Shown in pieces: positions 3,166 through 59,908 of a stretch of DNA of 64,000 nucleotides; positions within the stretch are counted from its first letter, which is position 1; each line of letters opens with the position of its first letter. A program made the position numbers and the translations under genes. The notes under the pieces are model-generated. The model did no database searches. It saw nothing but the letters and a program-made list of their open reading frames with translations, and had not been told where the DNA came from. Location: assembly GCF_001194135.2 (NCBI RefSeq), contig NC_069007.1, forward strand, positions 10,709,536 to 10,773,535, in the 5' to 3' direction. The DNA is from Octopus bimaculoides (taxonomy: Eukaryota).

Positions 3166-3960
3166 ATGGCAGCCTCCGTCGCCGTACAGATGAATCTACA
3201 TCCGACCATGAACTGGTACGTGGATGATATCGTGGAAGCGTTCAAGAAATTTAAACAGAAAACTCAACTGGCTTTCAAAAGCTTCCTTAAAGGTACAACT
3301 GCCGATGAAAAGGGAAGCTACATCCTTTTATGGACGGGAGAGAAGGGTCTAGACCTATTCAATAGTTGGGATATGTCAGAATCGGATTGCAATAATCCAG
3401 ACATACTTTTAGAGAAATTTGAAAGGCACCTAGAGCCCAGATCAAACCATAGAATTCATAGGTATGAATTCCAGGGCCTGAAACAAGACCCACAAGAAAC
3501 AACTGACAACTTCCTGTCCAGACTAAAGAATGTTGCCGAGAAGTGCAAATTCAAAGAAAAGGACGAAAGGATTGCTGATCAACTTCTATGGGGGTGTGCT
3601 CATAAAGAAGTCCAGAAATCTCTCATCGGTAAGGATGCTCTCCAGCTGGCAGAGGCAGTAGATACTGCAAGAGCATTCGAAGCCACTACCAAACAAATGG
3701 CATCACTTACTTTACAAACAAACACAGTAGGCAGCAGTGTAGATATTGTATCTAGACATAAGACGAAACATACCCACAAACAGAGAACATGCCAGTACTG
3801 TGGTACAGAGCATGAGTTCAATGACCTGAGGAAATGTCCTGCATTCGGTACACACTGCAAAGCATGTGGAAAACCCAACCACTGGGGAAAAATGTGTAGA
3901 CTAGCAAAATCTCAAAAATATAAGCCCCAATTTTCAAAGTGGAGTGGTAAGAGAAGATAA
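3166..3960 (+). CDS. Gypsy Gag (264 aa) with CCHC zinc knuckle
   Basis: The ORF contains CKACGKPNHWGKMC (CX2CX4HX4C) and a typical Gypsy capsid region (FLSRLKNVAEKCKF..IADQLLWG). Confidence 0.9.
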   Translation: MAASVAVQMNLHPTMNWYVDDIVEAFKKFKQKTQLAFKSFLKGTTADEKGSYILLWTGEKGLDLFNSWDMSESDCNNPDILLEKFERHLEPRSNHRIHRYEFQGLKQDPQETTDNFLSRLKNVAEKCKFKEKDERIADQLLWGCAHKEVQKSLIGKDALQLAEAVDTARAFEATTKQMASLTLQTNTVGSSVDIVSRHKTKHTHKQRTCQYCGTEHEFNDLRKCPAFGTHCKACGKPNHWGKMCRLAKSQKYKPQFSKWSGKRR

Positions 3961-4011: not shown

Positions 4012-5480
4012 TTGGCAGTCGGCACAATAAATGTGCATGAGATGGGAAATGACAACCAGAAAAAAAATGAGGCATATACAACAATACAAATTCAAAGGAA
4101 GTCAGGCAAGAAACGAATTATCATTGACTTAAAGCTGAAGATTGACACTGGAGCCCAGAGTAATATCTTACCTATCAACCTCTACAAAAAGATGTTCCCA
4201 GAACACATGATACAAGAGGATAAAGTCAAAGAAGGAATCATCACTGCATAAGGAGGTACCAGGATTCCACAACTGGCCAAAGCAACCATTACAGGGACAC
4301 ACAAAGGAAAAATAATCAAGTGTTCTTTTTATGTCGCAAGAACAGGACCTGCAATTCTTGGACTTGATACCTGTCAAAAGCTTAATATTGTGTCAGTCAA
4401 CGGTGAAGTGAAGGCAGCTCCAAGCAGGATTGACAGAAATATGCCTATCAAAAACCTCACAAAATCACCAGCCAGACTATCCTCACATGATAAACAGGAG
4501 ATGGAAGGACTAAGTGTCAAGGTCCACCACATTGTAAATGTGACAAACACAAAGCTGGAACAAATCAAAGAGACCAGCAAAGACGAAGAACTCCAGCTCC
4601 TTACTCAGATGGTGATTCAGGGGTGGCCAGAGAAGAGACATCAGGTGCAGCCCCTCATTCGTGAATATTGGGCCATCCACGATGACATAGCAGTGGAAAA
4701 TGGAATCCTGATGGCTGGATCCCGAATAATTATACCCAAATCAATGCAAAAAGAAATTCTAGAAAAGATCCACCAAGGGCATCTGGGAATGGAAAAATGC
4801 AAACTCTGAGCCAAGTCAGCTGTATATTGGGTAGGCATGTACAAAGATATAGAAAAGATGGTTTCTGCATGCCACATCTGTCAAAAGTACAGGAACACAC
4901 AACGAAAGGAGGAAATGATATCCAGTGACATTCCAAGAAGGCCATGGCAAACTATTGGAGTAGATCTGTTCACAACGAACCAAGAATTGTACTTGATTAT
5001 GGTCTGCTACTACTCCAAATTCCCATTTGTGAGAAAAGTGAAAGACCTGAGAGCCAAAACAATAACTACAGTGGCTCGAAGACTTGTAGCAGAGCAAGGA
5101 ATACCAGAGCAGATCATTTGTGACAATGGAACCCAGTTCACATCTCAAGAATTCAAAAAGCCAGCCAATGAGTATGGGTTCAACATTGTAACCTCATCTC
5201 CACACTACCCCAAAGGTCATGGATTCATTGAAAGACAGGTGCAGACCGTCGAGAGAACATTTGTCAAATGCTGAGAAACCAAGGAAGATTCACACCTGGC
5301 TCTTTTGTCCCTACGAGCAGACATGAAATGCCCAGCAGAAATGCTGAATGGTAGGAAATATAAGACCACCCTGCCAACTAAGATCCAACCTCCTATTGAC
5401 CAGGAAGAGACAAGGGCAAAGCTAGCAGCCACTCAAGAACAAGCACACAAATATTGCAACATGCACAATATTTACCTGGA
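4012..5480 (+). pseudogene. Gypsy pol relic (protease, RNase H stub, integrase) with in-frame stops
   Basis: ORFs starting at 4012, 4390, 4837 and 5305 share the gag frame and are separated by point stops at 4249, 4807 and 5272. No RT motifs (no YxDD) are present. Confidence 0.88.
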
Positions 5481-5553
5481 TCAACTTTCTAAATGCGAAT
5501 TACCAACAAAGAAAAAAAATTTTTATGTAAAAATAGATTTTTTTTGCACACAC

Positions 5554-6427
5554 ACTGAAGACATGATTATGATTGTACGTGTTTTACTTGACATGTTTAC
5601 AAACAGTATCTATAGCGGAGTGATACACACTGTGCGTATCTGCCCTAGACACAGTTCATACAGCTTAGTAGATGCGCTTAACAAAATAGTACTACTAGTG
5701 GGGATGTATTCATACATACGTATACCTACGCATGCACATAGATATGAAAGTGTAACATCCCTTCTTGAAAAAAAAAAGGATATTTTGGCAATGAAAAAAT
5801 AGAAGTAATCTCCCTTATACTAATGGATTGTCAGCGCAAGGGTGGCAATCCTGCAGCAGAAACCGTGGGATTATTCTGCCCACACACATGGTTTTCTGCT
5901 TCCTAATCCAGCAGAAGTAGTTGTTTTATTATTTTTCTCTTTTAACGGTATCGAATCGGTGGATCTTGTTCTCTGCACTGGTGTCTGAGGTGTGTCGTTG
6001 GGCTGCTGATGGGTGGTTGGTGTCCGTTGGGGTGATGATTCTGTGGAAACACGGATTCTGTTTGTGCCGTCATCTGCTGTGCATGTTGTGGTTCTTGTTG
6101 GTGTTGTCACTGATGCTGCAGGTGTTGCGCGTGTTATTCTCGATAGCTTTGGTGTTGGGCGGATGTGGGCCCGTTTACGTCTCAGCTGCCTACCAGATTC
6201 AGTTTCTATAATGTACGATCTTGGAGTTTCAGCTCTACTGACAACTTGTGCTGGGATCCATGTTTTAGTTATAGGATCTTGAGTATGCACATGTTGTCCT
6301 CCAAGTATCTCAGGTAAATATTGTGCATGTTTGTTGTAATATTTCTGCGCTTGTTCTTGAGTGGCTGCAAGCTTTGCCCTTGTCTCTTCCTGTTCAATAG
6401 GAGGTTGGATCTTAGTAGGCAGGGTGG
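5554..6427 (-). mobile_element. Second Gypsy fragment in opposite orientation: integrase C-terminus, PPT and partial 3' LTR
   Basis: ORF 5871-6452 repeats TTLPTKIQPPI(D/E)QEETRAKLAATQEQA and continues through the integrase C-terminal region. The PPT AAGAAGGGA (5758-5766) is followed by the LTR start TGTTACA at 5757. About 55 bp at 5554-5608 is the reverse complement of the 5' LTR segment 2941-2998. Confidence 0.88.
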
Positions 6428-6660
6428 TCAAGAACGAAAGAATACATAACATTCACATATTTCACAGCAAAATGGTTTTCCTATGGTGTATATTCTTTTC
6501 TACTCGAGGCACAAGGCCCGAAATTTTGGAGAATGGGATCAGTCGATTAGATCGACCCTAGTACGCAACTGATACTTAATTTATCGACCCCGAAAGGATG
6601 AAAGGCAAAGTGAAGCTCGGCGGAGTTTGAACTCAGAACGTAAAGACAGACGAAATACCG

Positions 6661-8335
6661 ATTTCTTTATTACCCATAAAGGGTTATACAAAGAATTTTT
6701 AAGACATCACAAAACATAAAGACAATACAAAACGCAACAAACATAAAATCGGGGAACTAAAAATTACAAAAGCGAATGATAATAGTAGAAGAAAAATTAA
6801 AATAAAATGATAATATGCAAGAATGAAAAAATGAGGCGCAATGTCCACTCGGGTGGTTACATTTATCCAGTTTTTCACTTTTACGTTCAACATCATGTAA
6901 ACATTTTAACAGTTTTGCAACTCAAAAAATTGAAATACTCGCGTTATTTTTCTCCCATTAATCACTGTTACTTCCGTCCTTATCAACTGTAAGTAATCAG
7001 TTCTAGGGGGTGGTGTCTCCACCAACCATACCCTTTTCGTTATTATATCTTCACCAAGTTCTTTTATGTAATCCCAGTAGTTTTCCTCACGTATCAAAAT
7101 GCATTTCTCAGCACATTTCTCTGGCATCTTCACTCTTATTATTTCCTCCAATCTCTCGACTTTACTCTCCATCTGCTCACAATTCTCATACTTTATCAAA
7201 ACCCCCTTGTATTGGACATCTTTATCCGTTCTCTCCTCCTCTTCTTGTACATTATTAGTTTCTGGCTTTTCTATCTCTTTTTTGTTTTCTGTTGACCGTT
7301 CCTTTGACTTATTTTTCTTTTGCTTTTTCAGGTTAGTAGCTCCATTTTCGTTCTTCTCCTTTGTTTTCTCTGTTTCACACTTTTGTCTCTCTTTCAATTC
7401 CTCAGTATGATCTACAATGTTTTCCTCCTCTGCTTGTGCTTTCTCTTGCTGTGGCTGTGTGAACTCATATAGGGGGCATTTGGTCTTCATATGACCTCTT
7501 TCCCCGCATATGTAGCAATTTGGTTTCCTTCCCTCGACTACAACATTTAACGTTCCCTCATCCTCCACTTCTATCTGGTAGGGAATTCTTTCTATGTCCT
7601 CGAATGTGGCAAAAAGCCACATTTCGAGTTCAAATCCCCACCATTTGTGCACTTTTGATTTCGCCACTGGTCCCACTTCCAGCTCCTCCATGGTTGCAGC
7701 CAGCACTGTTGCAACCAGCCACTCTGGTTTAATTTCTGGTGTAACTCTGGGAATACGTATTTTCACACTACTTCTTCCTCTATAACTTGGTAGTAATGCT
7801 ATTTTTTCATTTCTTAAAATGTTGGTTGCATGCTTGGTTGCCTCTTCTATAGTGGCGAACCTCACCTCTACCGTACCGAACTTTCTTCCTCTGTTGATGT
7901 ACGTGGCTTCATTCACAATTCCACCCAGGCACTCCTCGATTTCCTCTTCCGTCACCATTTCAATTTTACAGGTTTCGACAGCCTGGGTACGATAAACAAC
8001 TGTCCTCAGAATTTTGTCTTCTTTAGTCTCTTTTGGGGGGCACAATTTGTATGAGTCTCCCTCTACTTCTATCAAATTCCTGCTTCTGGTCACCTCCTCC
8101 ATATCCAACTCGATCAATTTGGTTTCCAGCGGCACTGGCTTCCTCGCCGCAGTGGCCTTGGCGTAGCTCTCCATACTGGAGACACTACTACTTGCCATAG
8201 CTGCGGAAAAATGCAGCGGCTCGCATGAAACGTAACAGCAATAATTCCACAAAAATCACAATTATTTACAGAGACAACTTCACATAGTTTTCACAAAGTA
8301 ACACAACAGTATTCACAATAAATCACAGAGCCGTT
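6661..8335 (-). mobile_element. ORF1-only non-LTR retroelement, 1675 bp (Tx1/L1-like ORF1, no RT)
   Basis: A 6-bp TSD ATACCG lies at 6655-6660 and 8336-8341. The element has a single ORF, a T-rich 3' UTR and a 3' end ..GGGTAATAAAGAAAT. Confidence 0.85.
6906..8252 (-). CDS. LINE ORF1-like nucleic-acid-binding protein (448 aa; 430 aa from MASSS at 8198): probable RRM-like region, CCHC knuckle and K/E-rich tail
   Basis: Intact ORF with N-terminal SYAKAT, an RRM-like GTVEVRFATIEEA, and VVVEGRKPNCYICGERGHMKTKC (CX2CX4HX4C). Confidence 0.85.
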   Translation of the reverse strand: MWNYCCYVSCEPLHFSAAMASSSVSSMESYAKATAARKPVPLETKLIELDMEEVTRSRNLIEVEGDSYKLCPPKETKEDKILRTVVYRTQAVETCKIEMVTEEEIEECLGGIVNEATYINRGRKFGTVEVRFATIEEATKHATNILRNEKIALLPSYRGRSSVKIRIPRVTPEIKPEWLVATVLAATMEELEVGPVAKSKVHKWWGFELEMWLFATFEDIERIPYQIEVEDEGTLNVVVEGRKPNCYICGERGHMKTKCPLYEFTQPQQEKAQAEEENIVDHTEELKERQKCETEKTKEKNENGATNLKKQKKNKSKERSTENKKEIEKPETNNVQEEEERTDKDVQYKGVLIKYENCEQMESKVERLEEIIRVKMPEKCAEKCILIREENYWDYIKELGEDIITKRVWLVETPPPRTDYLQLIRTEVTVINGRKITRVFQFFELQNC

Positions 8336-8394
8336 ATACCGCTAAGCATTTCGCCCGGCGTGCAAACGTTTCTGTCCTACAGTATATATTAATT

Positions 8395-8525
8395 TGTGTG
8401 TTATTATGTCACTGTTAGAAGTGAATAATCTTCCACATTTTTCATAATAAAAGGGTTTCTCTCCAGTGTGAATACGTTTTTGAACTGCAAGACAGAAAGA
8501 TTTGCCACAGATATCACAGTAATAT
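8395..8525 (-). pseudogene. Degenerate C2H2 zinc-finger relic (about two fingers)
   Basis: Minus-strand translation gives YYCDICGKSFCLAVQKRIHTGEKPFYYEKCGRLFTSNSDIITHK. The first finger has an internal deletion and lost His; the second has lost a Cys. Confidence 0.75.
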
Positions 8526-9078: not shown

Positions 9079-10048
9079 CTAACATGTCTCACTGCAGTTT
9101 CTCTCGTGTTTCGTTAAATCGCTGTTTGTAATAAATGATTTCCCACATATATCACAATGAAAAGGTTCTTCTCCAGTGTGACTACGCTTGTGAACTACAA
9201 GCCAAGAATTCTTAGAGAAGGATTTCCCACAAATATCACAATGAAAGGCTTTTTCTCGAGTGTGTATTTGTTTGTGTATTTTTAAGTCACAGTTGGTGTT
9301 GAAATATTTCCCACAAATTCCACACTGGTAGGGTTTTTCTCCAGTGTGAATTTTCTTGTGTTTCGTTAAATCACTATCAGTGAAACAGGATTTCCCACAA
9401 ATTTCACAATGGAAAGGTTTCTCTCCCGTGTGGCTACGTTTGTGAATTGTAACATGAGAACTATTAGAAAAGGATTTCCCGCAGATGTCACAATGGAAAG
9501 GTTTTTCTCCCGTGTGACGACGTTCATGAACTACAAGATGAGAACTATGTGAGAAAGATTTCCCACAGAGGTCACAACGATAAGGTTTTTCTCCAGTATG
9601 ACTACGTTTGTGGAGAATGAAACAAAAATTCTGAGCGAAGGATTTCCCACATACGTCACAGTGAAACGGTTTTTCTCCAGTGTGTATCCTTTTGTGTGTT
9701 ACTAGGTGGTCGTTAGTGATAAAAGATTTTCCACATATTTCGCAGTGGTACGGTTTTTCTCCGGTGTGTTGTCTTTTGTGAACTATAAGATTAGATTTAT
9801 CAGAGAAAGATGTCCCACATATATCACAATGATACGGTTTTTCCCCAGTGTGTATTCTTTTGTGTCTTGCTAAATTACTGTTAGAGATGAAATATTTTCC
9901 ACACGTTTCGCAGAGGAATGGTTTTTCTCCAGTGTGTGTTCTTTTGTGTCTTGTTAATGTACCGTTAGAGACAAAAGATCGCTCACATATTTCACAGTGG
10001 AAAAGTCTTTTCGTTTCGTGCATTCTTTTGTGTGTGAAGACTTCATGT
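9079..10048 (-). CDS. Tandem C2H2 zinc-finger protein, 5' part lost in the gap; 10 complete C2H2 fingers, a terminal C2HC-like finger and the tail of a further finger
   Basis: Repeated CxxC-x12-HxxxH units with TGEKP[FY] linkers. The frame stays open upstream of the listed ATG (HEVFTHKRMH) up to the N gap at 10049. Confidence 0.95.
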
Positions 10049-11487: not shown

Positions 11488-11886
11488 TTACTCTTTTACA
11501 CGTTTCAGTCATTTGACTGTGACCATGCTGGAGCACCACTTTTAGTCAAAGAAATCAACCCCAGGACTTATTCTTTGTAAGCCTCATATTTATTCTATCA
11601 GTTTCTTTTGCCAAACCGCTAAGTTTCAGGACCATAAACACACCAACATCGGTTGTCAAGCGATGGTGGTGTGACAAACTCAGACATAAAGAAACACACA
11701 TATAAATAAATGTGCATATATACGACGGTCTTCTTTCAGTTTCTGTCTACCAAATCCACTCATAAGGCTTTGGTCAGCCCAAGGCTACAGTAGAAGACAC
11801 TTGCCCAAGGTGTCACACAGTGGGACTGAACCCGGAACCGTGTGATTGGTAAGCAAGCTTGTTACCACACAGGTATGCATGCGCCT
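11488..11886 (-). mobile_element. CORE-type tRNA SINE, family B
   Basis: tRNA-like head plus the CORE-like ACCTTGGGCAAGTGTCTTCTAC and an internal (TA)/(CA) tract. Other copies lie at 23002-23389, 26920-27340, 33660-33913, 39079-39484(+), 43617-43955(+), 46470-46797, 62955-63330 and 63355-63600. Confidence 0.8.
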
Positions 11887-12926
11887 TTTTAGATATATAT
11901 ATATTTTAGATACACTTCAAAATACAGCAATTATCCAGCAAACTTGGTGTCAGAAGTGGCCCGGAATTCTAGACTTTCTGGTTTTCTGGAGACAGCTTAA
12001 ATAGATGCTTAAAATAATAAAGATCTGAATTGTATCTAACAGATTCAAGTAAATACATTCCCAAAACAGGGTTTGTTTGATATTTATTACTCCACCTAAA
12101 ATATGCAACTGCATTTGTGGCTTTAATCAGCATGTTGAATTACGAGAATTTTTTTATTTCGAATGTACCTTCAACTGCTTTTAGCTTTCTGCTTGTCCCA
12201 CTTTCTCAGGATTGGTATGAAGAGTCACATTACCAAGAACTCCAATAACAGCATAAAAAGCTCCCATGATTGAAAGAAGAAGAGTGATTTTAGTAGATGT
12301 GTTGAGAGGAATAGATTTATTGTTATGAGAGGGTAGAGAGAATAGGAGACAGCATGGAAGGGACACTGGATCACCACTGATGAGAACATAGTTTAAGTTG
12401 TTGTTTAGAACTAGTAGGGCCCTGATTTAGCAAACCTTTAATTAAAAGTGTTGCAGTTGAGACCATTCCAACAACTCCTTAAGCATAAGATACATTTAAC
12501 TACAGCCAATGCATAAAAGGCCACTCTCTGCAGTTCACACAGTCCATGTTAAATGGGTTGAACCATCCTATTTTTATCAGGGGTATGTAAGGCTTATTTC
12601 AGAAGGTAGGGCGGTATTTGAGGGTTATTTGGCTTCTATTTCTAGAAAACTGAGTATCCTTGTTGGCTTGACATAGACTAAGCTGATGTTTAGTGAAAGG
12701 TCTGATCCAGCCGGCTTATAATCAAAAGCATTTTTTTAGCCTTGACTGTCATATATTTTTAGTAAGATTGCAGGAGTACTTAAGTATGACGAAGCTGCTA
12801 TACTTTGTCAACTTGGAGAAAGACTTCAACAGAGTCCTTCACTCTGATCTGAGATGATGAAAAGTTTATCAATACTATACTCATGCAAGCCATGTTCGAT
12901 GTTGCTATCAGCGAAGTGAAAGGCAA

Positions 12927-14803: not shown

Positions 14804-15090
14804 TATTTTCTAAACAAAAAGCATACTTTAATAATTGCATTAGCCTAAAACAGGGGTTGCCAAAAAGAGGTCGGCGAGGAATTACAGGAGATCGATAATA
14901 GCCAAGGGATTGACATGCGAAAGAGCAGCTCACTCATATGAACTGCTTGAGACACTGAGTCAGCGCCATGCCCCTCCTTCACATTGATGTTATCACTTTC
15001 GATAAAAGATATTCCAGCAATATGATGCGTTTTACACATTTTCTAACCGTGAAAACAATTTCATAAAAATTGAAAGTTTAATGATGGATA

Positions 15091-15310
15091 CTTTTTCTAC
15101 TCTAGGTACAAGGCCTGAAATTTTGGGGGAGGAGAGGGTGGCAGTCAATTAGATCAACGCCAGTACGCAACTGGTACTTAATTTATCGACCCCGAAAGGA
15201 TGAAAGGCAACGTCAACCTTGGTGGAATTTGAACTCAGAACGTAAAGACAGACGAAATACCGCTAAGCATTTCACCCGGCGTGCTAACGATTCTGGCAGC
15301 TCGCCGCCTT
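15091..15310 (-). mobile_element. Family A SINE, near full length
   Basis: Head GGCGGCGAGCTGCCAGAATCGTTAGCACGCC on the minus strand, with a tail of type ..GCCTTGTACCTAGAGTAGAAAAAG. Confidence 0.85.
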
Positions 15311-15488
15311 TAATAATGTATACTTGTACACAAAGTTTTAAATGTAAAAAAGTGTGTCATCTTCAATAGATTTTCTTGATTTGTCATACATGTATATTTT
15401 AGCTAGCTTTTTAATTGCCAATATCAGTACCCAGTACGCATTTACGATATGGTACAGTAAGGTAGGGTATTAAGATATTTTAAATGAG

Positions 15489-22180: not shown

Positions 22181-23189
22181 TATGTACCAAACTGAAATAA
22201 GTATTGGGTTGATATGATCATCTTACTACAAAATTATGAATGTAGTGCTCAGCATAATCCAGTCCGATGACTGAAACAAAAACGATTATATGATTATGTG
22301 GTCAAGAAGTTTGCTTCACAACCACGTGCTTTCTATTTCACCCCCACTGCATGGCACTTTGGGTAAGTATCTCCAACTATTGCTCTAGACCATGCCTGCA
22401 CCTACATATGCATATATAATGATGATAACAATATATGTAATTGGATGGCTATTTGACTTTCCTCAGTTCGTCTACCTTTGACAAGTCATGTTTTTCCTCT
22501 TGCAGAATGTCCACCCATCCTCCAGTCTCACTCACCAAGCAGGCTGATAGTCTGACCAATTCATGTTGAATTCTCACGCTCACACAATGCAGTGTATAAC
22601 ATTCTTTCTTTTATACACACAAGACCTGAAATTTGGGGGGAGGGGGCTAGTCGATTACATTGATCCCAGTGCATAACTGGTACTTATTTCGTCGACCCTG
22701 AAGGGATGGAAGATAGAGTCAACCTCAGCGGAATTTAAACTCAGAATGTAGCAAAGGAGTGAAATACCGCTAAACATTTCATTCAGCATGCTAACGATTC
22801 TGCCAGTGGCATAAATAGAGAGTGAAGACATAACATGGTAACAAAAGCCATATATTGTTGAAATAAACACAAAACAAGTTAATGTTATAGCAAAAATGTT
22901 ACTGTGCTTGTTTCAATAATCTTTTGCGGATTAAGGTATGTTTATCTTCTGCACTCATCTGAAACATCATTGCGGTTCGGATGGTGACATTTTACTCTTT
23001 TTTTACTCTTTTACTTGTTTCAGACTGTGGCCATGCTGGAGCACCGCCTTTAGTTGAGCAAATCGACCCCAGGACTTATTCTTTGGAAGCCTAGTACTTA
23101 TTCTATCGGTCTCTTTTACCAAACCGCTAAGTTACGGGGACGTAAACACACCAGCATCAGTTGTCAAGCGATGTTGGGGGGACAAACAG

Positions 23190-23232
<43 letters not shown>

Positions 23233-23740
23233 TACGACGGGCTTCTTCCAGTTTCCCTCTACCAAATCCACTCACAAGGCTTGGTCAGCCCGAGGCTATA
23301 GCAGAAGACACTTGCCCAAGGTGCCACGCAGTGGGACTGAACCCGGAGCCATGTGGTTTGTAAGCAAGCTACTTGCCACGCCTGCGCCTATTTGATAACA
23401 TTTTCCAGTCAACAAACTATCTGGTGGCTCTGTATTTTCAAAGATGAATGGAATGAAAACTCGCTTATGTAAGTAGGTGGGGGTGGCAAGAAGGGCCATC
23501 CAACAGTAAGAGCAATGTCTCAATAATATCTAATCACCGAACCCATGCTTACATGGTAAAACAGAAGCAAAAACAAACAAATGAATCTATGCACATCCAT
23601 CTATACAATTTTTAGAACTGTATTTGTTCAGCAAGGACTTCATCTGAGATTGCATATTGAAAGAGAAACAACTGTTTCCTGTAGCTATTTGAAATATACA
23701 GACAGGTACCACTAGCTTCACAACTGGCGGAATCATTAGT

Positions 23741-25764: not shown

Positions 25765-27126
25765 CTTCGATGAAACTACAGATGGTCACTACATAAAGAA
25801 ACAAAAAAAAAAAACATTGATTAATAAGTTATTTGGAATTCGTCATCGACACATTTGACATCTCTCCTTTATAGTCTACCTTTTCCATAATCTAACAGTA
25901 AAAACCTGAAACACCCTAAAACAAAAAATTTCCCACACATGCAGTATTGCAGCTAAAGAAAGGACTAGTGAAATTAATGCACAATATTTTTTTTACAAAT
26001 GGTTTGGCCCAGAGGAAGTGATTGTGCTTAAGGCTTTTAAAGAACTGGCTCTGAAGATGAAGAACCATTTCTGTGATGCAGTCTTTGCTATGTTGAGGAC
26101 ATTTGTAATGACTAGATGCCTTTTGTTGTATGTTCTTCATTTTTCATGTTTAGTGTGGCACAATTAACACCAAATACTCAGGCCTCAATACAAACAGTAA
26201 GAAACAAGTTTATTGAATAGCGGTATGTACATTGTGCATGTATATATACATTCATACACATATATAAATTTAATTTAATATAATTTTAATTTCACTAATT
26301 GGATATGGAAGCAACATCATAAAAATTGTCCTTTTGTTCATCCAGCAGTCTCAGGTAAGAGGCATAGAAATAGATAAAAGTCACTGTCTAATTTTCCAAG
26401 ACTAATCTAAGATTAAACATCGTGTCACACACTCTGACTACCTCAATTACTTCACCCACTCATTTCTCTACTAAAAATACATTCTCTAACACATACTACC
26501 ACTATTACCTTCCCAGAAGATTTTCTACCTATGTTCTTTGCCTGTGAGGTATGTCTGAGGCTTACCTACATCTTACATATTGCACACAACACACATCTAT
26601 ATGCCCTCATTCTAGCATTTCTACAACCTCACCAGATCAACCTTTCAATGTGCCTAGATTGACTGTAGCAGCCCCAGGAAAGTGGACTGGGTGGAAAGAG
26701 TAAGTAGGGAGTTGGGGAAACAGTTTCCAGGTTTGTGGGAAGATTTGCCTTTAGGTAGACTACTCTTGCACACTACAAGCCACACAAATTTTCCCATGGA
26801 CCCTAAGCTTCTGAAAGGTCCATCTATTCAGTTTTTGAGCTGCTGTTGTATATAGTCACTTGCTGACATCTCTCCTTCATATTATGCCCAGCTAAAATTT
26901 TATGTAATCATGATTATACTCTTTATTCTTTTACTTGTTTCAGTCATTTGACTGTGGTCATGCTGGAGCACCACCTTTTTAGTTGAGCTAATCGATCCCA
27001 GGACTTATTCTTTGTAAGCCTAGTACTTATTCTATCGGTCTCTTTTGCCGAGCCGCTAAGTTACAGGGACGTAAACACACCAGCATCGGTTGTCAAGCGA
27101 TGTTGGGGGGACAAACACAGACACAT

Positions 27127-27177
<51 letters not shown>

Positions 27178-28479
27178 ACGGGCTTCTTTCAGTTTCCGTC
27201 TACCAAATCCACTCACAAGGCTTTGATCAGCCCGAGGCTATAGTAGAAGACACTTGCCCAAGGTGCCACGCAGTGAGACTGAACCCAGAACCATGTGGAT
27301 CGTAAGCATGCTACTTACCACACAGCCACTCCTACGCCTATATTACGATAACAATATTGTTAAAATACACACTATACCTCTTGAAGCAGATATCTGACCA
27401 CGAAATCCAGATAATGTATTCAAAACTACATTACAACAACCTCCCTCTTAAGTACGCAACTTGAACCTAACCACATGTGTGTACTTAGCCGGTACGTTGC
27501 AACAGCAGTAGCAAATCAGTTGCATGAATGTATGCGTGCAGCTAATCACAGAAAGGCTCATGTATGCACACAGTTTTAGATCACATTTATTATCTTTTCT
27601 GTCAGGTTTCTGATATCACATACCTTGAGCCATTTATTACCTGTTTAGATGTCCAATGTTGCTGGAGAATAAATCGTTGATAAATTTAAACCTGAGATTC
27701 TTGAAGGTTTTGCATGTACTTATCTGTGATGCATACTTAACCAGGTTACAGTATTGTCCTTCCTATTTCAAAATAGTAGGGCTGTGAGATGAGGAAAATA
27801 TGCTGCTATTTCTAGCAGATCAAGTGACAGTGTAAATGTTCCCTTATAAACTCGTTAATGATGTATCACACTGGCTCAAACACACATATCTGTAAGATAA
27901 AGGGATGGTGGTACAATCGATTAAATTGATGACCCTTGTATATAACTGGAAGTCCTTTGATTGATATAAGAAAGATAAAAATCAAGACATACAGTCATCA
28001 TCATCATCGTTTAAAGTCTGCTTTCCAAGCTAGCATGGGTTGGATGATTTGACTGAGGATTGGCGAGCTGGATGGCTGCACCAGGCTCCAATCTGATCTG
28101 GCAGAGTTTCTACAGCTGGATGCTTTTTCTAACCCCAACCATTCCTAGAGTGTAGTGGGTGCTTTTATGTGCCATCGGCACAAGGGCCAGTCAGGCGGTA
28201 CTGGCAACGGCCACACTCAAATGGTTTTTTACGTGCCACCTGCACAGGAGCCAGGCCAGCGGCACTGGCAACGACCTTGTTCGAATGTTTTCTAATGTGC
28301 CACCGGCACAAGTGCCAGTAAGATGACGCTGGTATAGCATGGCTGTCAGAGTTCAGGAATAAAAATGTATAAAACCTTTATCTTTTAAGAAATATTGAAA
28401 ATTCAAGATACACAAAGTTGCTGGATCTGTATACTACATAATCATTCAATATAACCCCTACCAACTTTAATAACATCCT

Positions 28480-33640: not shown

Positions 33641-34859
33641 CATGACAGGTCTTAAAGACTAGAACTTATTCTATCAGTCTCTTTTACCAAATTGCTAAGG
33701 GGATGTAAACATACCAACAGCGGTTGTCAAGTAGTGCTGGGAGACAAACACAAACATACACACATATATATATATACGACGGGCTTCTTTCAGTTTCCAT
33801 CTATCAAATCCACCCACAAGGCCTTCGTCGGCCCAAGGCTATAGTAGAAGACACCTGCCCAGGGTGTTATGTAGTGGGACTGAACCTGGAACCATGTGGC
33901 TGGGAAGCAAACTTCTTACCACACAGCCATGCCTATATACGCTCTTTTTGTGTTGTGATCTCTATTTCTCCGGTTTGTAAAGCCAATTTTTCCGAAAATT
34001 TTCCCTGATCATTGTTTAATCTAAGCCCTGATCGAACAAATCTATGACCAAAGGCGTTTCAGTTGTGACCATCCCCTCTATCAATATATCCAGAGGTGGT
34101 GTCTGATATGTCCTTTAAAAAATGTGGAATTTAAAGGAGACTTAACAGCTATTTCTTAAAGTTCAAGTGAACATGCAAACGCTACCCAGTTTTGTTTAGT
34201 TCTAGCTTAGCGGCAACGTTAGGTTAGAGGAGCTCCACCCGCGACCACGCCCTCAATTTGTATCTCTTCGATTACATTGTCCATTGTGACTTTGCTTCTT
34301 TTTTTCAGTTTTAAAGAGAAAAATAGACAGTAGGGAATAAAATGGGGGGAGAATTAGTTGTTATTTCCAGCTGGGCCACCTACGTGTTAATTGTGCTATG
34401 AGAAACACCGACTTGTAATTCGAGAGATCTTCCCTGCCGTGTCGGTGCTTGAGGATCAAAATTTAAAAATTATCCTAACATATGTCAACAACACATCTTC
34501 ACATACAGAGTACTTAACTGTTTAGAAAGACAAAACACCCACCAATGACGGACAAGGTACATTATTATTCACGCGCGCATATATATATAAAAATCGGGCA
34601 GTAATCCAGAGTTGCCTATTTAGCTAAATGTAATAGTAGACATGAAACCAATGATAACTTTCTGTCCGGCCATAACCAACATATACTACTCCAGTACATT
34701 ATATATATACACACACACACCTGTATACAAAGGTCATGAACAATGCTTCTTCCTCCAGAACATACATAAACACACAGCTGTATGTACTCATACACATGTA
34801 TATATTTAATATAATTATACACGTATCAATACGTATGTGTATGGCATATGCGTTCATGT

Positions 34860-37862: not shown

Positions 37863-40800
37863 GTGTGTATGGAGGATTAGCATTTGTAGTGAACAGAGCT
37901 CAACAGAATCCTCATTCTTCTTTAGAGGAGCTCTTGGCTCTGTGATGCAGTTGTAGTAATATTACACATTGTTCTTTCTTTTTAAATATTCAATTGCAAT
38001 ACCTAATCAACTATGTACATTCTTATTGCCAACATTAGAACCTATTTCAGTTGCCACACTGCCTTGCAGTCTGAAATATCTTATGTCTTTGACCCTCATT
38101 TCTTAGAACCTTGGTAAATTTTTTATTCTGGGTTTCTTTTCTTGCTAGAATTACCTGACATCTCACTTTTCTTCTCAAAGTTTGGAATTACATTTTCCAA
38201 GCCTGCCTCTTAGCCTTACTAGCTCTATGTACAACGCTATTCCAGCACAATGTCACCCTCTTTTTGGCTGGGATCTGGTACCAGCCACATTTTTGGTCAT
38301 CTGGTTCTATCCATTGTTATTTTTTTTTTCCTGCACTATCATGTGTCAATTAATATGTCTCTAAGCTTGTTACTAGTCATTTGTTCTCTCAGTTTCCATT
38401 TTCTCTTTCTCCAGATTATCTTCTGTCTTGGTATCCATCTAGTTCTTACTCTGAAGTCACTAACCACTAGTCTATGTTAGATCGTGCATTCTTTCCCATA
38501 GATTTAACATTCAAAACAAACTGTTCATCTCTCTTTCTAGTGACCACATAGTCTCCCTAGCTTCTGTACTCAGGGAATTGATAGGAGATCAGGTTGCTGG
38601 CCAATTTGTTCCATTATATTTATTTTCACTTCAGATAAGATTGCAAATTGTGTTTGAAGGTTGAGTGAAATGCTTTGTAGAACTTATTTCAGCTTTTTCA
38701 GTTCTGAGTTCAATTTATAACAAAGTCAAGTTTGGTTTTCTCTATTTTTGGGTTAAAAAAATGAGATACTGATCTAGTGTGGTGGATTGGTTGAATGGTT
38801 ATAGTATCAAACCACATTCTTGTGGTATTTGTTGCAGCTCTTTGTGTTCTGGGTTCAGTCTCATTGTAGCTTACTTGGGTAATCGATTTAATCTGGATTA
38901 ACTTCATCAGCTGGTCCTTGAGTACGTTTAGCAGAGTGTACTCTCTTATATGCATTAAGGCTGTGTTTCTGGTTTGAAGATATCTGCCTCCCTTCCTCTT
39001 ACCAATCTCACAGGACCTGAAATAGCATCATGGCTACTGCCTTTGTCTCTAAATGATAAAAAATATAAAATGAACATAAGGCATAGGAGTGGCAGTATGA
39101 TAAGTAGCTTGCTTACCAACCACATGGCTCCAGGTTCAGTCCCACTGCATGGCACCTTGGGCAAGTGTCTTCTACTATAGCCTCAGGCCGACCAAAGCCT
39201 TGTGAGTGGATTTGGTAGACGGAAACTGAAAGAAGTCCGTCGTATATATGTATATATATATATATGTATGTGTGTGTATATGTTTGTGTGTCTGTGTTTG
39301 TCCCCCCAACATCGCTTGACAACCGATGCTGGTGTGGTTACGTCCCTGTAACTTAGCGGTTTGGTAAAAGAGACCGATAGAATAAGTACTAGGCTTACAA
39401 AGAATAAGTCCTGGGGTTGATTTGCTTTACTAAAGGCGGTGCTCCAGCATGGTCACAGTCAAATGACTGAAACAAGTAAAAGAGTATAAGTATTTCTCTG
39501 CCTAAATTTGGCAGCTTAGGTGTTTGTTTGAATCCAGATCAGTTCTGATTAGACAGATTTATAGACATTCCAGCTATGACCATCTTGTCATTTTTTTTCC
39601 CCCAGATGAAGTGTTTAAAGGAGAACATTATTCATTATCTCCTTCTTTTTTAAAGATGGTAGGATGTGATTTGAGGAAGACTTAGTTGCTACTTCTTGCA
39701 GGATGGTCAAGCAGATGCTCTTTCATTGACTTGTGCCTGACTCATTTGTTTTGTTGTGTAATTCCATAGGAATGACTGGCCACTCCTATGGCATATTGAC
39801 ATGCTATAAATGATAGTCAAACATTCTTCAACTATTACACTACAATATTAAAAATAAACACTTGAATGTATTCGTCCTCAAATCATACCCTATTTTTATA
39901 TGAATGCATGCACACAGGTATGAGCCAACATAGGAACTTCTACATGCCATTGCAACCTGGTAGAGATAGTTGGTAGAAGGTTAATAATCAGAACTGATTA
40001 CCTGCATTCCCAAATGGATCACTTGAAGATTATGGAGATCTTTTCCACATGAAATCATTGATTGCCTTTTTAATTCACAAATAAAAGATATTTAGCCACC
40101 AAATGCAGTGTTGAGAACTCATTTTCACTGTCTGATACTGTTATATATATATATATATGTGTGTGTGTGTGCATGTATATACAAGCCAGTAAGTAAGACA
40201 TATAAATGGGTGCTATATGTGATAGAAAAAAAACAGCCAAATCTTTCTCTAACCTCATCCGAGATTCTCTGAAAATTTTCAGTCAAATAATGCAGCGCTA
40301 TCAAAAACAAAATGCCTTATGACCTGGAAGTTTCAATCATGTCCTGAAAATTTAATGGCTACAATTGTTTCATTTCTCCAGACTGTCTCTGAAACCAACT
40401 GCTTTTCCATTTGAATTAAAAATATTTTGATTTTCTTTTCTGATTCAGCTTTACCATGAACATAAATCTCAAAAAATCACTGAACATTTTTAAATTGAAA
40501 TTTGTGGATATTGTCTTTTTAATGGTCAGGTTTATGTTAAGACATTAAAAGACCCTGGTAGACTCTTCATCCCAGCATCACAAGTCCAAACCCAAAATAT
40601 TCATCCCAAGGGTTTATATTTTTGTATTTTATATGTATANNNNNNNNNNNNNNNNNNNNNNNNNNNNNNNNNNNNNNNNNNNNNNNNNNNNNNNNNNNNN
40701 NNNNNNNNNNNNNNNNNNNNNNNNNNNNNNNNNNNNNNNNNNNNNNNNNNCATAATTAAGGGATCAGCAAGCATTTGCTTCACCATATACCGAAGTTCAG

Positions 40801-42657: not shown

Positions 42658-43713
42658 GCATCACACTTTACATTCGCCAGAACCGCCTGACTGGCCTTCG
42701 TGCCGGTGGCACGTAAAAGCACCCACTATACTCTCGGAGTGGTTGGTGTTAGGAAGGGCATCCAGCTGTAGAAACTCTGCCAAATCAGATTGGAGCCTGG
42801 TGTAACCACCTGGTCCACCAGTCCTCAGTCAAATCGTCCAACCCATGCTAGCATAGAAAGCGGATGTTAAACGACGATGATGATGATGATCTTTTGCCAT
42901 TCTTGCTGCTACTTGTACTATTACTAAAAGGAATTGACACAGTTATAGCATTTTTACCTGTACAAACCATAGTATCCAAAACTTGCATTTATAGCTGGTA
43001 AGAGTAGAGTTTCAACAATAGTATGTGGTTTTCCGCATTTCACAATTAAATTTTGAAAGTTTATAAGACATAACCAACCCCTTCTCAATTTGCTTCATTT
43101 GTTTGGTAAAAACAACCCTTTAAGATGGTTTTTTAAATAATTTTTCATTTGGTGAAGCAGTCTTCACCTTTTCCTGCTTTATCTGGATTCATTTTTTGTT
43201 AATGTTCAATTATTCTTGAAGGCTTCCGTGCTTCCTTTGAGAAGATTTTTTCACATATTAAACACAGCAGCAACTGTTCATTATTTAAAGAGGGAATAAA
43301 TCCATATTTCAAATATTCACTCGAATATCTATCTATATCTATCTGTCTATCTATGGCACTTTCTTTTCACACTCACGCTAAATTTTTAAAAGAATAACTT
43401 ACACATTTAATTATATCATTAAGCAAAATATAATGGAGATCATAACATACAAAGAAAACAAACAAGATTGCACGCCTAAAAAAATACTATTCAAGACAAA
43501 AGTACAAGATTAAAAATGAATTATTCTTGTACAAACATGTCTTTTAGCAACAATATTTACTTATCTCTCATTTTATTTTAATTGTTTCATCATGTATAAT
43601 ATAATTACTACTGTAGCACCTTGGGCAAGTGTCTTCTACTATAGCCTCGGGCTGACCAAAGCCCTGTGAGTGGATTTGATAGACGGAAACTGAAAGAAGC
43701 CCGTCGTATATAT

Positions 43714-43749
<36 letters not shown>

Positions 43750-44526
43750 ATATGTTTGTGTCTGCGTTTGTCCCCCCAGCTTCACTTGACGACCGGTGCT
43801 GGTGTGTTTGCGTCCCCGTAACTTAGCGGTTCGACAAAAAGTAACCGATAGAATAAGTACTAGGCTTACAAAAAATAGGTCCTGGGGTCGAGTTGCTTGA
43901 CTAGAGGCGGTGCCCCAGCATGGCAGCAGTCAAATGACTGAAACAAGTAAAAGAGTATAGGTAAAATTTAGTATGTTAATTACGTTTTTTTTTTTATCGC
44001 TCCACAAAAGCCTAACACGCTTTCGACATGCCCTGCTCCCGCTGACGAAGACATGGCAAGGGAGGTAACTCATTAATTGACGCTGGCAAGAGTTACCTCT
44101 ATTTATCATTTGAAGGTTAAGAACGGACAACACAAACTACAGCTGCTACAGGTCAGTTATTTCACGATTCTTTCTCCATGTTCCTTGCTTTTTGTTGGTC
44201 AATTCGTATGTTTTAAAATACGATAATTAATTAATAGATGTTAATTAGAGATCGTTATATTTAACGCCCTAAATAAATACCATTTAAGACTTCTACATGC
44301 CGAAGTACCGTTTTGAAAAACAAAAAAAAAGTTTCTTTCCACATCAAATACTCCGAAATTAGCGGCATTGGTTACACATAGACACATGTGTATCTGTAGT
44401 TCTTATATCCGAAGAAGAAGCACACTCGAACATTAGAGCAGGAGTATATATTTTTTAGGTAGTTGTTATGGCCGGCCTTTGAGTGACCATTGGTTTCACA
44501 CCTATAAAGCGCTTGGCAGTATAGGC

Positions 44527-53440: not shown

Positions 53441-53672
53441 GAGGTGAGCTGGCAGAATTGTTAGCACGCTGGGTAAAATGCTTAGTGGTATTTCGTCTGT
53501 CTTTGCGTTCTGAGTTCAAATTCCACTGAGATCGACTTCGCCTTTCATCCTTTCAGGGTCGATAAATTAAGTACCAGTTATGTACTGGGGTTGATGTTAT
53601 CGACTTAATCCCTTTGTCCTTGTTTGTCCCCTCTATATTTAGCTCCTTGTGGGCAATAAAAAAATAAGAAAC
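53441..53672 (+). mobile_element. Family A SINE, full length, tail ..CCTTGTGGGCAATAAAAAAATAAGAAAC
   Basis: Complete head, body and tail in sense orientation. Confidence 0.88.
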
Positions 53673-59475: not shown

Positions 59476-59908
59476 TCATTCCTACTCTAGGCACAAAGCC
59501 CGAAATTTCAGGGGAGTGGGCCAGTCAATTAGATCGACCCCAGTATGCAACTGGTACTTAATTTATCAACCCCGAAAGGATGAAAGGTAAAGTCGATCTC
59601 GGTAGAATTTGAACTCAGTACATAAAGACAGATGAAATACCGCTAAGCATTTCACCTGGCATGCTATTGTTTCTTATTTCTTTATTGCCCACAAGGGGCT
59701 AAACATAGAGGGGACAAACAAGGTCAGGCAAAAGGGATTAAGTCGATTACATCAGCCCCAGTGCCTAACTGGTACTTAATTTATCGGCCCTGAAAGGATG
59801 AAAGGCAAAGTCAACCTTGGCGGAATTTGAACTCAGAATGTAACGGCAGACGAAATACCGTTAAGCATTTCGCCTGGCATGCTAATGTTTCTGCCAGCTC
59901 GCTGCCTT
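59476..59908 (-). mobile_element. Two family A SINEs in tandem or nested, inside one 16-bp TSD
   Basis: The TSD CTATTGATAACATTAT lies at 59460-59475 and 59909-59924. The two SINEs carry different tail types. Confidence 0.88.

What the first reader, a model, noticed from the sequence alone, without database searches (positions are those of the whole stretch)
6661..8335. Intact ORF1-only retroelement, a candidate third member of a LINE-SINE system
Seen: an exactly delimited 1675-bp insert with a 6-bp TSD ATACCG, a 137-nt leader, an uninterrupted 430-448-codon ORF with a CCHC knuckle, and a 245-nt 3' UTR ending AATAAAGAAAT. There is no endonuclease or RT, and both ends look complete. Established: ORF1 proteins with RRM plus CCHC occur in Tx1/L1-clade LINEs, several Tx1 families are target-specific, and ORF1-only derivatives (HAL1) are known in mammals. 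Inference: this is a non-autonomous, protein-coding element mobilised by an unseen LINE that also mobilises a local SINE subfamily. I do not know of a description of it in cephalopods. The 100-aa C-terminal domain after the K/E-rich tract is unassigned.
Basis: partly seen in the sequence, partly recalled or inferred. Interest (0 to 1): 0.9.

Follow-up and report, generated by a model that had tools for sequence, protein, structure and literature searches.

The report
Octopus ORF1-only non-autonomous LINE element
This is a real 1.7-kb octopus retrotransposon that keeps only the RNA-binding "ORF1" gene of a LINE and carries the same 3' tail as a full LINE and a SINE, so it most likely borrows their reverse transcriptase; elements of this kind are known (HAL1, HeT-A), but I found none described in cephalopods.

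Summary
Window 6661-8335 (minus strand) is a 1675-bp insert in a tRNA-derived SINE. It has a perfect 6-bp duplication (ATACCG), a 137-nt leader, an intact 430-codon ORF and a 245-nt 3' UTR. It has no LTRs, no TIRs, no poly(A), and no endonuclease or RT.

The ORF product is a LINE ORF1 protein. It is modelled as two RRM-like folds, a CCHC knuckle, a long helix and a C-terminal domain.

It is 31-37% identical to ORF1s that lie directly upstream of APE-RT ORF2s in Octopus vulgaris, O. sinensis and Argonauta hians. Those LINEs are L1/Tx1-like.

The LINEs, ORF1-only relatives in O. vulgaris, and two SINE copies in the window share a 3' module: a covarying 4-bp hairpin followed by AATAAAGAAAT.

ORF1-only sequences from two species form their own clade with 100% bootstrap. 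O. vulgaris copies show dN/dS of about 0.2. This argues against a one-off deletion or a gene retrocopy.

In O. vulgaris the family forms head-to-tail arrays next to the LINE.

Not shown: copy number and the partner LINE in the window's own genome, 5' completeness, expression, and trans-mobilisation.

This is a new variant of the HAL1/HeT-A kind, of moderate interest.

The parts
6661..8335 (-). Whole ORF1-only retroelement (1675 bp)
   Evidence: Delimited by the rebuilt empty site in the host SINE and the 6-bp duplication. No LTR or TIR.
6655..6660 (.). Target-site duplication ATACCG, copy next to the element's 3' end
8336..8341 (.). Target-site duplication ATACCG, copy next to the element's 5' end
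8199..8335 (-). 137-nt 5' leader. Presumed internal promoter and 5' UTR; completeness not established.
   Evidence: O. vulgaris units have about 25-30 extra 5' nt. No alignable similarity otherwise.
6906..8198 (-). Intact ORF, 430 codons plus stop: an ORF1 protein
   Evidence: There are 473 homologues at E<=1e-3. It is 31-37% identical to ORF1s that lie upstream of APE-RT ORF2s.
7533..8021 (-). Two tandem RRM-like folds (aa ~60-222)
   Evidence: AlphaFold2 with a 149-sequence alignment gives pLDDT >90 over aa 20-245. Foldseek best matches are tandem-RRM proteins (NONO/SFPQ, IMP3 RRM12, hnRNP A1 UP1) at E ~1e-4, probability 1.0.
7473..7520 (-). CCHC zinc knuckle (aa 227-242, CYICGERGHMKTKC)
   Evidence: Pfam PF00098, E 1.2e-4, above the gathering score. 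The only sequence matches to solved structures (weak, E 0.33-7.9) are retroviral nucleocapsid knuckles and one unrelated chain.
7182..7469 (-). K/E-rich linker. aa 244-285 is modelled as one long helix; the rest is disordered.
   Evidence: pLDDT 80-85 for the helix and <50 for aa 286-339.
6909..7181 (-). C-terminal domain (aa ~340-430), fold unresolved
   Evidence: hhalign against the C-terminal domains of other octopod ORF1-family proteins (P0092, P0018, P0064): E 3.9e-8. Those against the C-terminal domains of ORF1s of autonomous LINEs: E 1.1e-3. No solved relative. Low pLDDT.
6661..6905 (-). 245-nt 3' UTR
   Evidence: It is 71% identical over about 150 nt to the 3' UTR of an O. vulgaris ORF1-only element, L008:10742-10886.
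6672..6684 (-). Tail hairpin ACCC-UUUAU-GGGU
   Evidence: The same 4-bp hairpin is present in 14 tails from LINEs, SINEs and ORF1-only elements. 55 of 56 cells pair; no shuffle in 500 reaches the observed pairing or covariation score; slid controls give 25-48%. RNAalifold predicts it independently.
6661..6671 (-). Terminal AAUAAAGAAAU shared with the LINE and SINE tails
6491..6660 (-). Host SINE, 3' part (tail type '...GCCTCGAGTAGAAAAG')
8336..8378 (-). Host SINE, 5' (tRNA-like) part
59676..59908 (-). SINE copy whose tail (...GTCCCCTCTATGTTTAGCCCCTTGTGGGCAATAAAGAAAT) matches the element and the LINE
53441..53665 (+). Second SINE copy of the same tail subfamily

Best explanation
The insert is a non-autonomous, protein-coding non-LTR retrotransposon. 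It belongs to an ORF1-only lineage within an octopod L1/Tx1-like LINE clade.

Shown:
- It was inserted as a discrete unit with a 6-bp target duplication.
- It encodes a complete ORF1-type protein: two RRM-like folds, a CCHC knuckle, a helical linker and a C-terminal domain.
- It has no endonuclease or RT.
- Its 3' end carries the hairpin + AAUAAAGAAAU module. The same module ends autonomous LINEs of this clade in O. vulgaris, O. sinensis and Argonauta, and ends a SINE subfamily in the window.

Inferred:
- It is transcribed from its own leader.
- Its ORF1p coats its own RNA in cis.
- The 3' module is bound by the ORF2 protein (APE + RT) of a partner LINE acting in trans. That protein nicks the target and copies the RNA by target-primed reverse transcription.
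- The SINE subfamily uses the same tail, giving a three-tier LINE / ORF1-only / SINE system.
For: - Insertion: the rebuilt empty site and the TSD; no LTR or TIR; no poly(A).
- ORF1 identity: there are 473 homologues, and every one of the looked-up hits that carries a source name is octopod. Homologues lie directly upstream of APE-RT ORF2s in L002, L006, L004 and L005. The model shows tandem RRM folds and Pfam finds CCHC.
- Partner LINE class: RVT_1 at E 1.5e-31 plus Exo_endo_phos. The best solved relative is human L1 ORF2p at E 1.4e-60. Relatives carry zf-RVT.
- Shared tail. Hairpin covariation. The Argonauta LINE is full length, ends ...AATAAAGAAAT and has a 16-bp TSD.
- An independent, lasting lineage: the ORF1-only sequences from the window, from O. 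bimaculoides and from two O. vulgaris families form a 100% clade, apart from the LINE ORF1s. At least six other O. bimaculoides or MetaClust fragments are 81-91% identical.
- Selection: among 19 O. vulgaris units the pooled pN/pS is about 0.2-0.34 in all three protein regions, with no substitution stops.
Against: - No LINE with this tail was found in the window, and none could be searched for in the window's own genome. The partnership is inferred from sister species.
- Only one copy with a TSD was seen directly. O. bimaculoides copy number rests on partial gene models.
- The upstream conserved box of the tail (TGTCCCCTCTATG) is degenerate in the window copy.
- 18 of 19 O. vulgaris array units carry frameshifting indels. 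Half are in homopolymer runs and could be assembly errors.
- The dN/dS pairs are not independent.
- There are no expression or mobility data.
Confidence: 0.8

Rival explanations
1. It is a cooperative 'gag-only' partner rather than a parasite. On this view the ORF1-only lineage is kept because its ORF1p supplies packaging or targeting to the LINE, as HeT-A Gag does for TART. Its C-terminal domain is one that the tail-sharing LINE's ORF1 lacks.
For: - It is a separate, old ORF1 clade under purifying selection.
- The O. vulgaris LINE that shares the tail has a short ORF1 with no C-terminal domain.
- ORF1-only units and LINEs lie together in head-to-tail chains at four loci on three O. vulgaris chromosomes (L001, L002, L003, L008).
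- HeT-A is a precedent (PMC5537684).
Against: - Other autonomous LINEs of the clade (L004, L005) carry their own full ORF1 with a C-terminal domain.
- Purifying selection is equally expected for a cis-acting parasite.
- There are no functional data.
Confidence: 0.15
2. It is a domesticated ORF1-derived host gene family, tandemly arrayed in O. vulgaris, and the window copy is a retrocopy of one such gene.
For: - The O. vulgaris units are in tandem arrays with dN/dS of about 0.2.
- L1TD1 shows that ORF1 can be domesticated (PMC4161310, title and abstract listed).
Against: - The units carry the LINE/SINE 3' tail and a LINE-like 5' start, and they abut LINEs head to tail.
- Arrays occur on three chromosomes with 4, 8 and at least 7 units.
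- The window copy has no poly(A) and ends exactly at the LINE-type terminus.
- Most array units carry frameshifts.
Confidence: 0.04
3. It is a one-off internal deletion of a full LINE, dead on arrival or deleted after insertion.
For: Internal-deletion derivatives of LINEs are common. TRE5-A.2 is one example (PMC5633606).
Against: - The same ORF1-only architecture, with homologous 3' UTRs, recurs in O. vulgaris (L008: 71% over 150 nt).
- The ORF1 is only 31-35% identical to the ORF1 of the tail-sharing LINE and lies in a separate 100% clade.
- No ORF2 remnant is present.
Confidence: 0.01

Closest known systems
HAL1 ('half-L1') of mammals
   Same: A non-autonomous LINE derivative that encodes only ORF1p and depends on the LINE's ORF2p. 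It lasted as lineages of its own, with several origins (PMC5753468).
   Different: From established knowledge: HAL1 has the mammalian Type II ORF1 (coiled coil-RRM-CTD) and relies on poly(A).

Here the ORF1 is Type I-like (RRMs + CCHC). The 3' end is a specific hairpin-bearing tail shared with a SINE, with no poly(A). The ORF1 forms a clade far from the partner LINE's ORF1.
HeT-A / TART / TAHRE of Drosophila telomeres
   Same: HeT-A is a Gag(ORF1)-only non-LTR element with CCHC knuckles and no pol. It lives with an RT-encoding partner in head-to-tail, same-orientation arrays, and its gag is under negative selection (PMC5537684). In O. vulgaris, ORF1-only units and LINEs form such chains.
   Different: The octopus arrays are chromosome-internal: 64 Mb of 226 Mb, 86 of 182, 100 of 129. 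The window copy is a dispersed insertion with a TSD. The partner is L1/Tx1-like, not jockey-clade.
TRE5-A.2 of Dictyostelium
   Same: It lacks ORF2 and is mobilised in trans by the ORF2p of the full element (PMC5633606).
   Different: From my own knowledge, TRE5-A.2 is a recent deletion variant of TRE5-A.1 with the same ORF1. The octopus lineage has its own diverged ORF1.
LINE-SINE pairs that share a 3' tail ('stringent' recognition, e.g. UnaL2/UnaSINE1)
   Same: The SINE and the LINE share a 3' tail, which the LINE machinery recognises (PMC5786205, abstract listed). Here a covarying hairpin lies 11 nt from the end.
   Different: A third, protein-coding passenger uses the same tail. Recognition itself has not been tested.
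Type I ORF1p of L1/Tx1 elements (Khazina & Weichenrieder classification)
   Same: At least one RRM plus a CCHC knuckle (PMC5203782). Both are met here.
   Different: There is an extra long helix and a C-terminal domain of about 90 aa with no Pfam or PDB relative.

Membership tests
Non-LTR retroposon inserted by target-primed reverse transcription | A discrete insert flanked by a target-site duplication, with a recoverable empty site | tested here: met
   6-bp ATACCG on both sides. The joined flanks rebuild an intact SINE.
Non-LTR retroposon inserted by target-primed reverse transcription | No LTRs or TIRs | tested here: met
   No terminal direct or inverted repeats.
ORF1-only non-autonomous LINE derivative (HAL1-like) | Its ORF is homologous to the ORF1 of autonomous LINEs | tested here: met
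   tblastn 31-37% identity, E 1e-31 to 1e-42, to ORFs directly upstream of APE-RT ORF2s.
ORF1-only non-autonomous LINE derivative (HAL1-like) | No endonuclease or RT | tested here: met
   Pfam finds only zf-CCHC. No ORF2 similarity in the window.
ORF1-only non-autonomous LINE derivative (HAL1-like) | A 3' end shared with an autonomous LINE | tested here: met
   The hairpin + AATAAAGAAAT tail is on LINEs in L002, L006, L008, L004 and L005. These are sister species; the same genome was not testable.
ORF1-only non-autonomous LINE derivative (HAL1-like) | Many dispersed copies, each with its own TSD | tested here: inconclusive
   At least 6 other O. bimaculoides or MetaClust fragments at 81-91% identity, but their DNA was not on record. 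The O. vulgaris copies seen are in chains or arrays.
ORF1-only non-autonomous LINE derivative (HAL1-like) | Mobilised in trans by the LINE's ORF2p | not testable with these tools
   Needs a retrotransposition assay.
Type I ORF1p | RRM fold | tested here: met
   The AF2 N-domain has pLDDT >90. Foldseek matches tandem-RRM proteins. Pfam RRM models do not hit.
Type I ORF1p | CCHC zinc knuckle | tested here: met
   PF00098 above the gathering score.
L1/Tx1 superfamily (partner LINE) | APE + RT + C-terminal zf-RVT, and closest to L1 ORF2p | tested here: met
Tx1 clade specifically | RT groups with Tx1 reference elements in a phylogeny | not tested
Tx1 clade specifically | Sequence-specific target | tested here: inconclusive
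   The same SINE position is the 3' junction in the window and at L008:13536/7. Other copies have unrelated targets: a 16-bp TSD in unique DNA, and an (ATT)n repeat.
HeT-A/TART-type telomeric elements | Confined to chromosome ends | tested here: not met
   The arrays are tens of Mb from the contig ends. The window copy lies inside a SINE.
Processed retrocopy of a host gene | Poly(A) tail and a single intron-containing parent | tested here: not met
   No poly(A). The family is multi-copy and carries the LINE tail. The existence of a parent gene could not be searched genome-wide.
Penelope-like element / retrozyme | Hammerhead ribozyme, GIY-YIG nuclease | tested here: not met
   No Rfam hit at E<=1 in the element or in O. 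vulgaris units.

The most novel reading that the evidence does not exclude
The ORF1-only lineage may be a long-lived, selected partner in a bipartite retrotransposon. Its own diverged ORF1p, with a C-terminal domain that the tail-sharing LINE lacks, would provide packaging or targeting. The LINE would provide APE-RT. Together they would build same-orientation head-to-tail chains, making this a chromosome-internal analogue of HeT-A/TART, possibly with preferred insertion at the anticodon-like loop of the SINE.
Probability: 0.15. Interest if true: 0.75.

Novelty: new variant of a known kind. Interest (0 to 1): 0.55.

Why it matters
ORF1-only LINE derivatives are known from mammals (HAL1), Drosophila (HeT-A) and Dictyostelium (TRE5-A.2). 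Two full-text searches of the held library found no description of one in cephalopods.

This one has its own ORF1 clade, which shows signs of purifying selection. It shares only a short structured 3' module with its presumed LINE and with a SINE. That gives a natural three-tier system in which to ask three questions:
- What does ORF1p contribute in cis versus in trans?
- How small a tail is enough to recruit ORF2p?
- How do head-to-tail LINE arrays arise?

It is also practical. Octopus genomes are about 25% LINE + SINE (PMC13282606). These ORFs are at present annotated as 'uncharacterized' or 'CCHC-type domain-containing' host proteins.

Tried and rejected
1. Penelope-like element or retrozyme reading of the tandem units: no hammerhead or other Rfam family.
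2. First AlphaFold run with 9 sequences: pLDDT 33, unusable. It was redone with 149 sequences.
3. Direct profile comparison of the window and O. vulgaris C-terminal domains with a mixed set of five other C-terminal domains (four from the group that includes autonomous-LINE ORF1s, plus P0018): E 0.51, not significant. The link becomes significant only through intermediates P0092, P0018 and P0064 (E 3.9e-8), and from those to the LINE C-terminal domains only weakly (E 1.1e-3).
4. PDB sequence and profile searches for the ORF and for the C-terminal domain: only zinc knuckles or chance hits.
5. Look-ups of the window protein and of O. bimaculoides models P0001, P0002 and P0092: not on record. So no O. 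bimaculoides copies could be examined at DNA level, and no dN/dS could be computed for the window's own subfamily.
6. L007 (O. bimaculoides, P0026) held only fragments of another subfamily.
7. The SINE array at L008:17440-18340 looked like site-specific stacking. It is a local tandem duplication that includes flanking DNA, so it was not counted as evidence for targeting.
8. TSDs of the two tail-sharing SINE copies in the window could not be read unambiguously.
9. Search with the C-terminal 105 aa: one fragment only.
Full report
**What is in the window**

Window 6661-8335 is a 1675-bp insert inside a tRNA-derived SINE.
- ATACCG occurs at 6655-6660 and again at 8336-8341.
- Joining the two flanks with one ATACCG removed gives a continuous SINE with no gap at the junction. 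It is colinear with intact copies elsewhere in the window (83% identity to 15090-15312).
- The element reads on the minus strand. It has a 137-nt leader, an ORF from 8198 to 6906 (430 codons from ATG, 448 from an upstream TTG), and a 245-nt 3' UTR ending AATAAAGAAAT with no poly(A).
- It has no terminal direct or inverted repeats and no second copy in the window.
- Pfam finds only a CCHC knuckle at aa 227-242.
- Nothing in the insert or in the whole window resembles an endonuclease or RT of the related LINE.

**What the protein is**

- The ORF has close relatives in Octopus bimaculoides (81-91% identity, partial gene models) and more distant ones in O. vulgaris (about 50%).
- A full HMMER scan with aa 1-250 found 473 proteins at E<=1e-3. 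Every one of the looked-up hits that carries a source name is from octopods: O. bimaculoides, O. vulgaris, O. sinensis and Argonauta hians.
- With a 149-sequence alignment, AlphaFold2 models aa 20-245 at pLDDT >90. The model shows two beta-alpha-beta-beta-alpha-beta units followed by the knuckle and a long helix at aa 244-285.
- Foldseek's best matches are tandem-RRM proteins: NONO/SFPQ, IMP3 RRM12 and hnRNP A1 UP1, at E about 1e-4 and probability 1.0. TM-scores are low because the whole 430-aa model was the query.
- RRM(s) plus CCHC is the 'Type I' ORF1p architecture of L1/Tx1-type LINEs (PMC5203782).

**The LINE exists**

- In O. vulgaris locus L002, a 229-aa homologue of the N-domain lies immediately upstream of an 850-aa ORF. 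The homologue is 31-37% identical by tblastn (E 1e-31 to 1e-42). The 850-aa ORF has Exo_endo_phos and RVT_1 (E 1.5e-31).
- The best solved relative of that ORF2 is human L1 ORF2p (E 1.4e-60, across APE and RT). Its database relatives carry APE + RT + zf-RVT.
- O. sinensis (L004) and A. hians (L005) have full LINEs. Their ORF1 (at least 601 and 527 aa, each contiguous) has the same layout as the window ORF: N-domain, CCHC, low-complexity linker, C-terminal domain. An ORF2 follows.
- The Argonauta copy is flanked by a 16-bp TSD. The O. sinensis copy lies in an (ATT)n tract.

**The shared 3' module**

The following all end in one module: a conserved box, then a 4-bp hairpin with a 5-nt loop, then AAUAA(A/U)(G/A)AAAU.
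- The O. vulgaris ORF1-only units.
- The O. vulgaris LINEs (L002, L006, L008).
- The Argonauta and O. sinensis LINEs.
- Two SINE copies in the window (59676-59908 minus strand; 53441-53665 plus strand).
- O. vulgaris SINEs.
- The window element.

These are documented.

Statistics for the module:
- The pattern GGGYAATAAAGAAAT occurs 5 times in the window with up to 2 mismatches, against 0.57 expected.
- Over 14 tails, 55 of 56 hairpin cells pair.
- No shuffle in 500 reaches the observed pairing (98.2% against 87.6%) or the observed covariation score (0.456 against 0.225).
- Sliding the partner by 1-3 columns gives 25-48% pairing.
- Pair 2 occurs as C-G, G-C and U-A. In the window element the closing pair is A-U rather than G-C or G-U.
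- In the window copy the upstream box is degenerate, but the hairpin and the terminal 11 nt are kept.

A tail shared by a LINE and a SINE is the classical sign that the LINE's RT recognises that tail (PMC5786205). Here a protein-coding passenger carries it too. Recognition itself is inferred, not shown.

**It is a lineage, not an accident**

- A neighbour-joining tree of the N-domain puts four sequences in one clade with 100% bootstrap. They are the window ORF, O. bimaculoides P0001, the O. vulgaris array unit, and a second O. vulgaris ORF1-only element (L008:9455-10929). The L008 element has an open ~385-aa frame in which about 35 residues look out of register (probably two compensating frameshifts), and its 3' UTR is 71% identical to the window's.
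- That clade is separate from the ORF1s of the autonomous LINEs, to which these sequences are 29-35% identical.
- Within the clade the sequences group by species. This suggests an ORF1-only lineage older than the O. bimaculoides / O. vulgaris split, dated at 13-33 Myr in PMC13282606.
- Among 19 O. vulgaris units, pooled pN/pS is 0.20 for the N-domain, 0.17 for the linker and 0.34 for the C-domain. No substitution creates a stop.
- Two caveats apply. The pairs are not independent. Also, 18 of the 19 units carry frameshifting indels; half of these lie in homopolymer runs, and the commonest (15 units) is in a C7 run. They may be assembly errors or real lesions.

**The C-terminal domain**

- The window and O. 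vulgaris C-terminal domains match those of three other octopod family members (P0092, P0018, P0064) at hhalign E 3.9e-8.
- That group matches the C-terminal domains of a group that includes ORF1s of autonomous LINEs (P0016, P0036; P0073 and P0121 have no genomic context on hand) only weakly, at E 1.1e-3 and probability 20%. The match is in register over the motif 'Y..LK..FP.DVG'.
- A direct comparison was not significant (E 0.51).
- There is no Pfam or PDB relative, and the model is of low confidence there.
- My reading is that this is a fast-evolving, clade-specific ORF1 C-terminal domain whose fold and role are unknown.
- The O. vulgaris LINE that shares the tail has no such domain.

**Head-to-tail chains in O. 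vulgaris**

- The ORF1-only units form arrays with a period of about 1780 bp. There are 8, 4 and at least 7 units on three chromosomes. Each array is followed directly by the LINE.
- The LINE itself forms a tandem of three copies with a 5.28-kb period. The junctions carry variable 6-10-nt linkers, which argues for separate events rather than simple duplication.
- L008 reads: LINE fragment | ORF1-only element | 5'-truncated LINE | SINE.
- Possible causes are repeated insertion at existing tails, RT template jumps from one RNA to the 3' end of another, or double insertion followed by unequal exchange (PMC5932611). I could not decide between them.
- None of the arrays is near a contig end, so they are not telomeric, unlike HeT-A/TART arrays.

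**Comparison and verdict**

The element works like HAL1, TRE5-A.2 and HeT-A: an ORF1/gag-only non-LTR element that must borrow an RT. It differs from them in four ways:
- a Type I-like ORF1 with an extra C-terminal domain;
- a structured, non-poly(A) tail shared with a SINE;
- its own deep ORF1 clade;
- chromosome-internal chains.

Full-text searches found no description of such an element in cephalopods. Repbase and Dfam could not be consulted.

I rate it a new variant of a known kind. Confidence in the main explanation is 0.8, and interest is 0.55.

**Limits**

- The source species is inferred from the best hits; O. bimaculoides or a close relative is most likely.
- The following remain untested: the partner LINE in that genome, genome-wide copy number, 5' completeness, expression and mobility.

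Noticed in passing
L001:4268-18525, L002:7787-14868, L003:1-12860 (O. vulgaris chromosomes OX597814, OX597816, OX597820): ORF1-only units form head-to-tail arrays with a period of about 1780 bp (8, 4 and at least 7 units, 94-98% identical). Each array is followed directly by a full LINE. About 250 nt on the left and about 490 nt beyond the LINE are also shared between loci, so the composite is itself repeated.
   Followed up: partly
L006:2432-17026 (O. vulgaris OX597840): Three full LINE copies lie in head-to-tail tandem with a period of about 5.28 kb. Each tail-to-head junction has a different 6-10-nt linker, which suggests separate events rather than duplication.
   Followed up: partly
window 6660/6661 and L008:13536/13537: The 3' junction 'AATAAAGAAAT|CGGTATTTCGTC' in the window and 'AATAAAGAAAT|TCGTATTTCGTC' after a 5'-truncated LINE in O. 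vulgaris fall at the same SINE position. That position is the loop of the anticodon-like stem GAAAT/ATTTC. It could reflect a site preference, or a template switch at an RT pause site. Unexplained.
   Followed up: partly
L002:14527-16088 versus L001 and L003: The LINE copies are mosaic. The 5' UTR + ORF1 part is only 85-86% identical between loci, while the ORF2 part is 98-99% identical. This points to recombination or template switching between subfamilies.
   Followed up: no
L008:17440-18340: Four tandem copies of a 5'-truncated tail-A SINE, together with its AT-rich flank. This is a local tandem duplication, not stacked insertions.
   Followed up: yes
window 59460-59924: A composite of two SINE copies is flanked by a 16-bp TSD, ATAATGTTATCAATAG (59460-59475 and 59909-59924). 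A tail-A SINE sits in the head of a tail-B SINE. The inner boundary is ambiguous because the two are homologous.
   Followed up: partly
window 9079-10023 (-), plus 8381-8473: A C2H2 zinc-finger array with 84-bp periodicity, with an open 314-aa ORF (zf-H2C2_2 E 3e-87), and a stray finger remnant just beside the element. This is typical of the octopus ZNF expansion.
   Followed up: partly
window 49180-50031 (+): A 283-aa ORF with a DUF3429 domain (E 1.3e-31). It is probably a host gene exon.
   Followed up: no
window 3166-3960 (+), 5305-5802 (+), 5871-6452 (-): A gag-like ORF with Cys/His knuckle-like motifs, and two oppositely oriented ORFs that share the motif 'TTLPTKIQPPI.QEETRAKLAATQEQA'. 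None has a Pfam hit. They are probably remnants of another retroelement.
   Followed up: no
window 11488-11908, 22996-23399, 26923-27358, 33655-33959, 46466-46804, 62945-63540; inverted at 39057-39486 and 43612-43968: A second abundant repeat family of about 400 nt, unrelated to the tRNA-like SINE, often containing a (TA)n or (CA)n tract.
   Followed up: no
P0001 (O. bimaculoides A0A0L8FKL1): This gene model repeats the linker and the start of the C-terminal domain twice (about 110 aa). It is either an internal duplication in that copy or a model spanning adjacent copies.
   Followed up: no
public annotations of P0015, P0016, P0036, P0001-P0003: ORF1 proteins of this LINE clade are annotated as host proteins, for example 'EPM2A-interacting 1-like', 'CCHC-type domain-containing protein' and 'uncharacterized protein LOC...'.
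   Followed up: no
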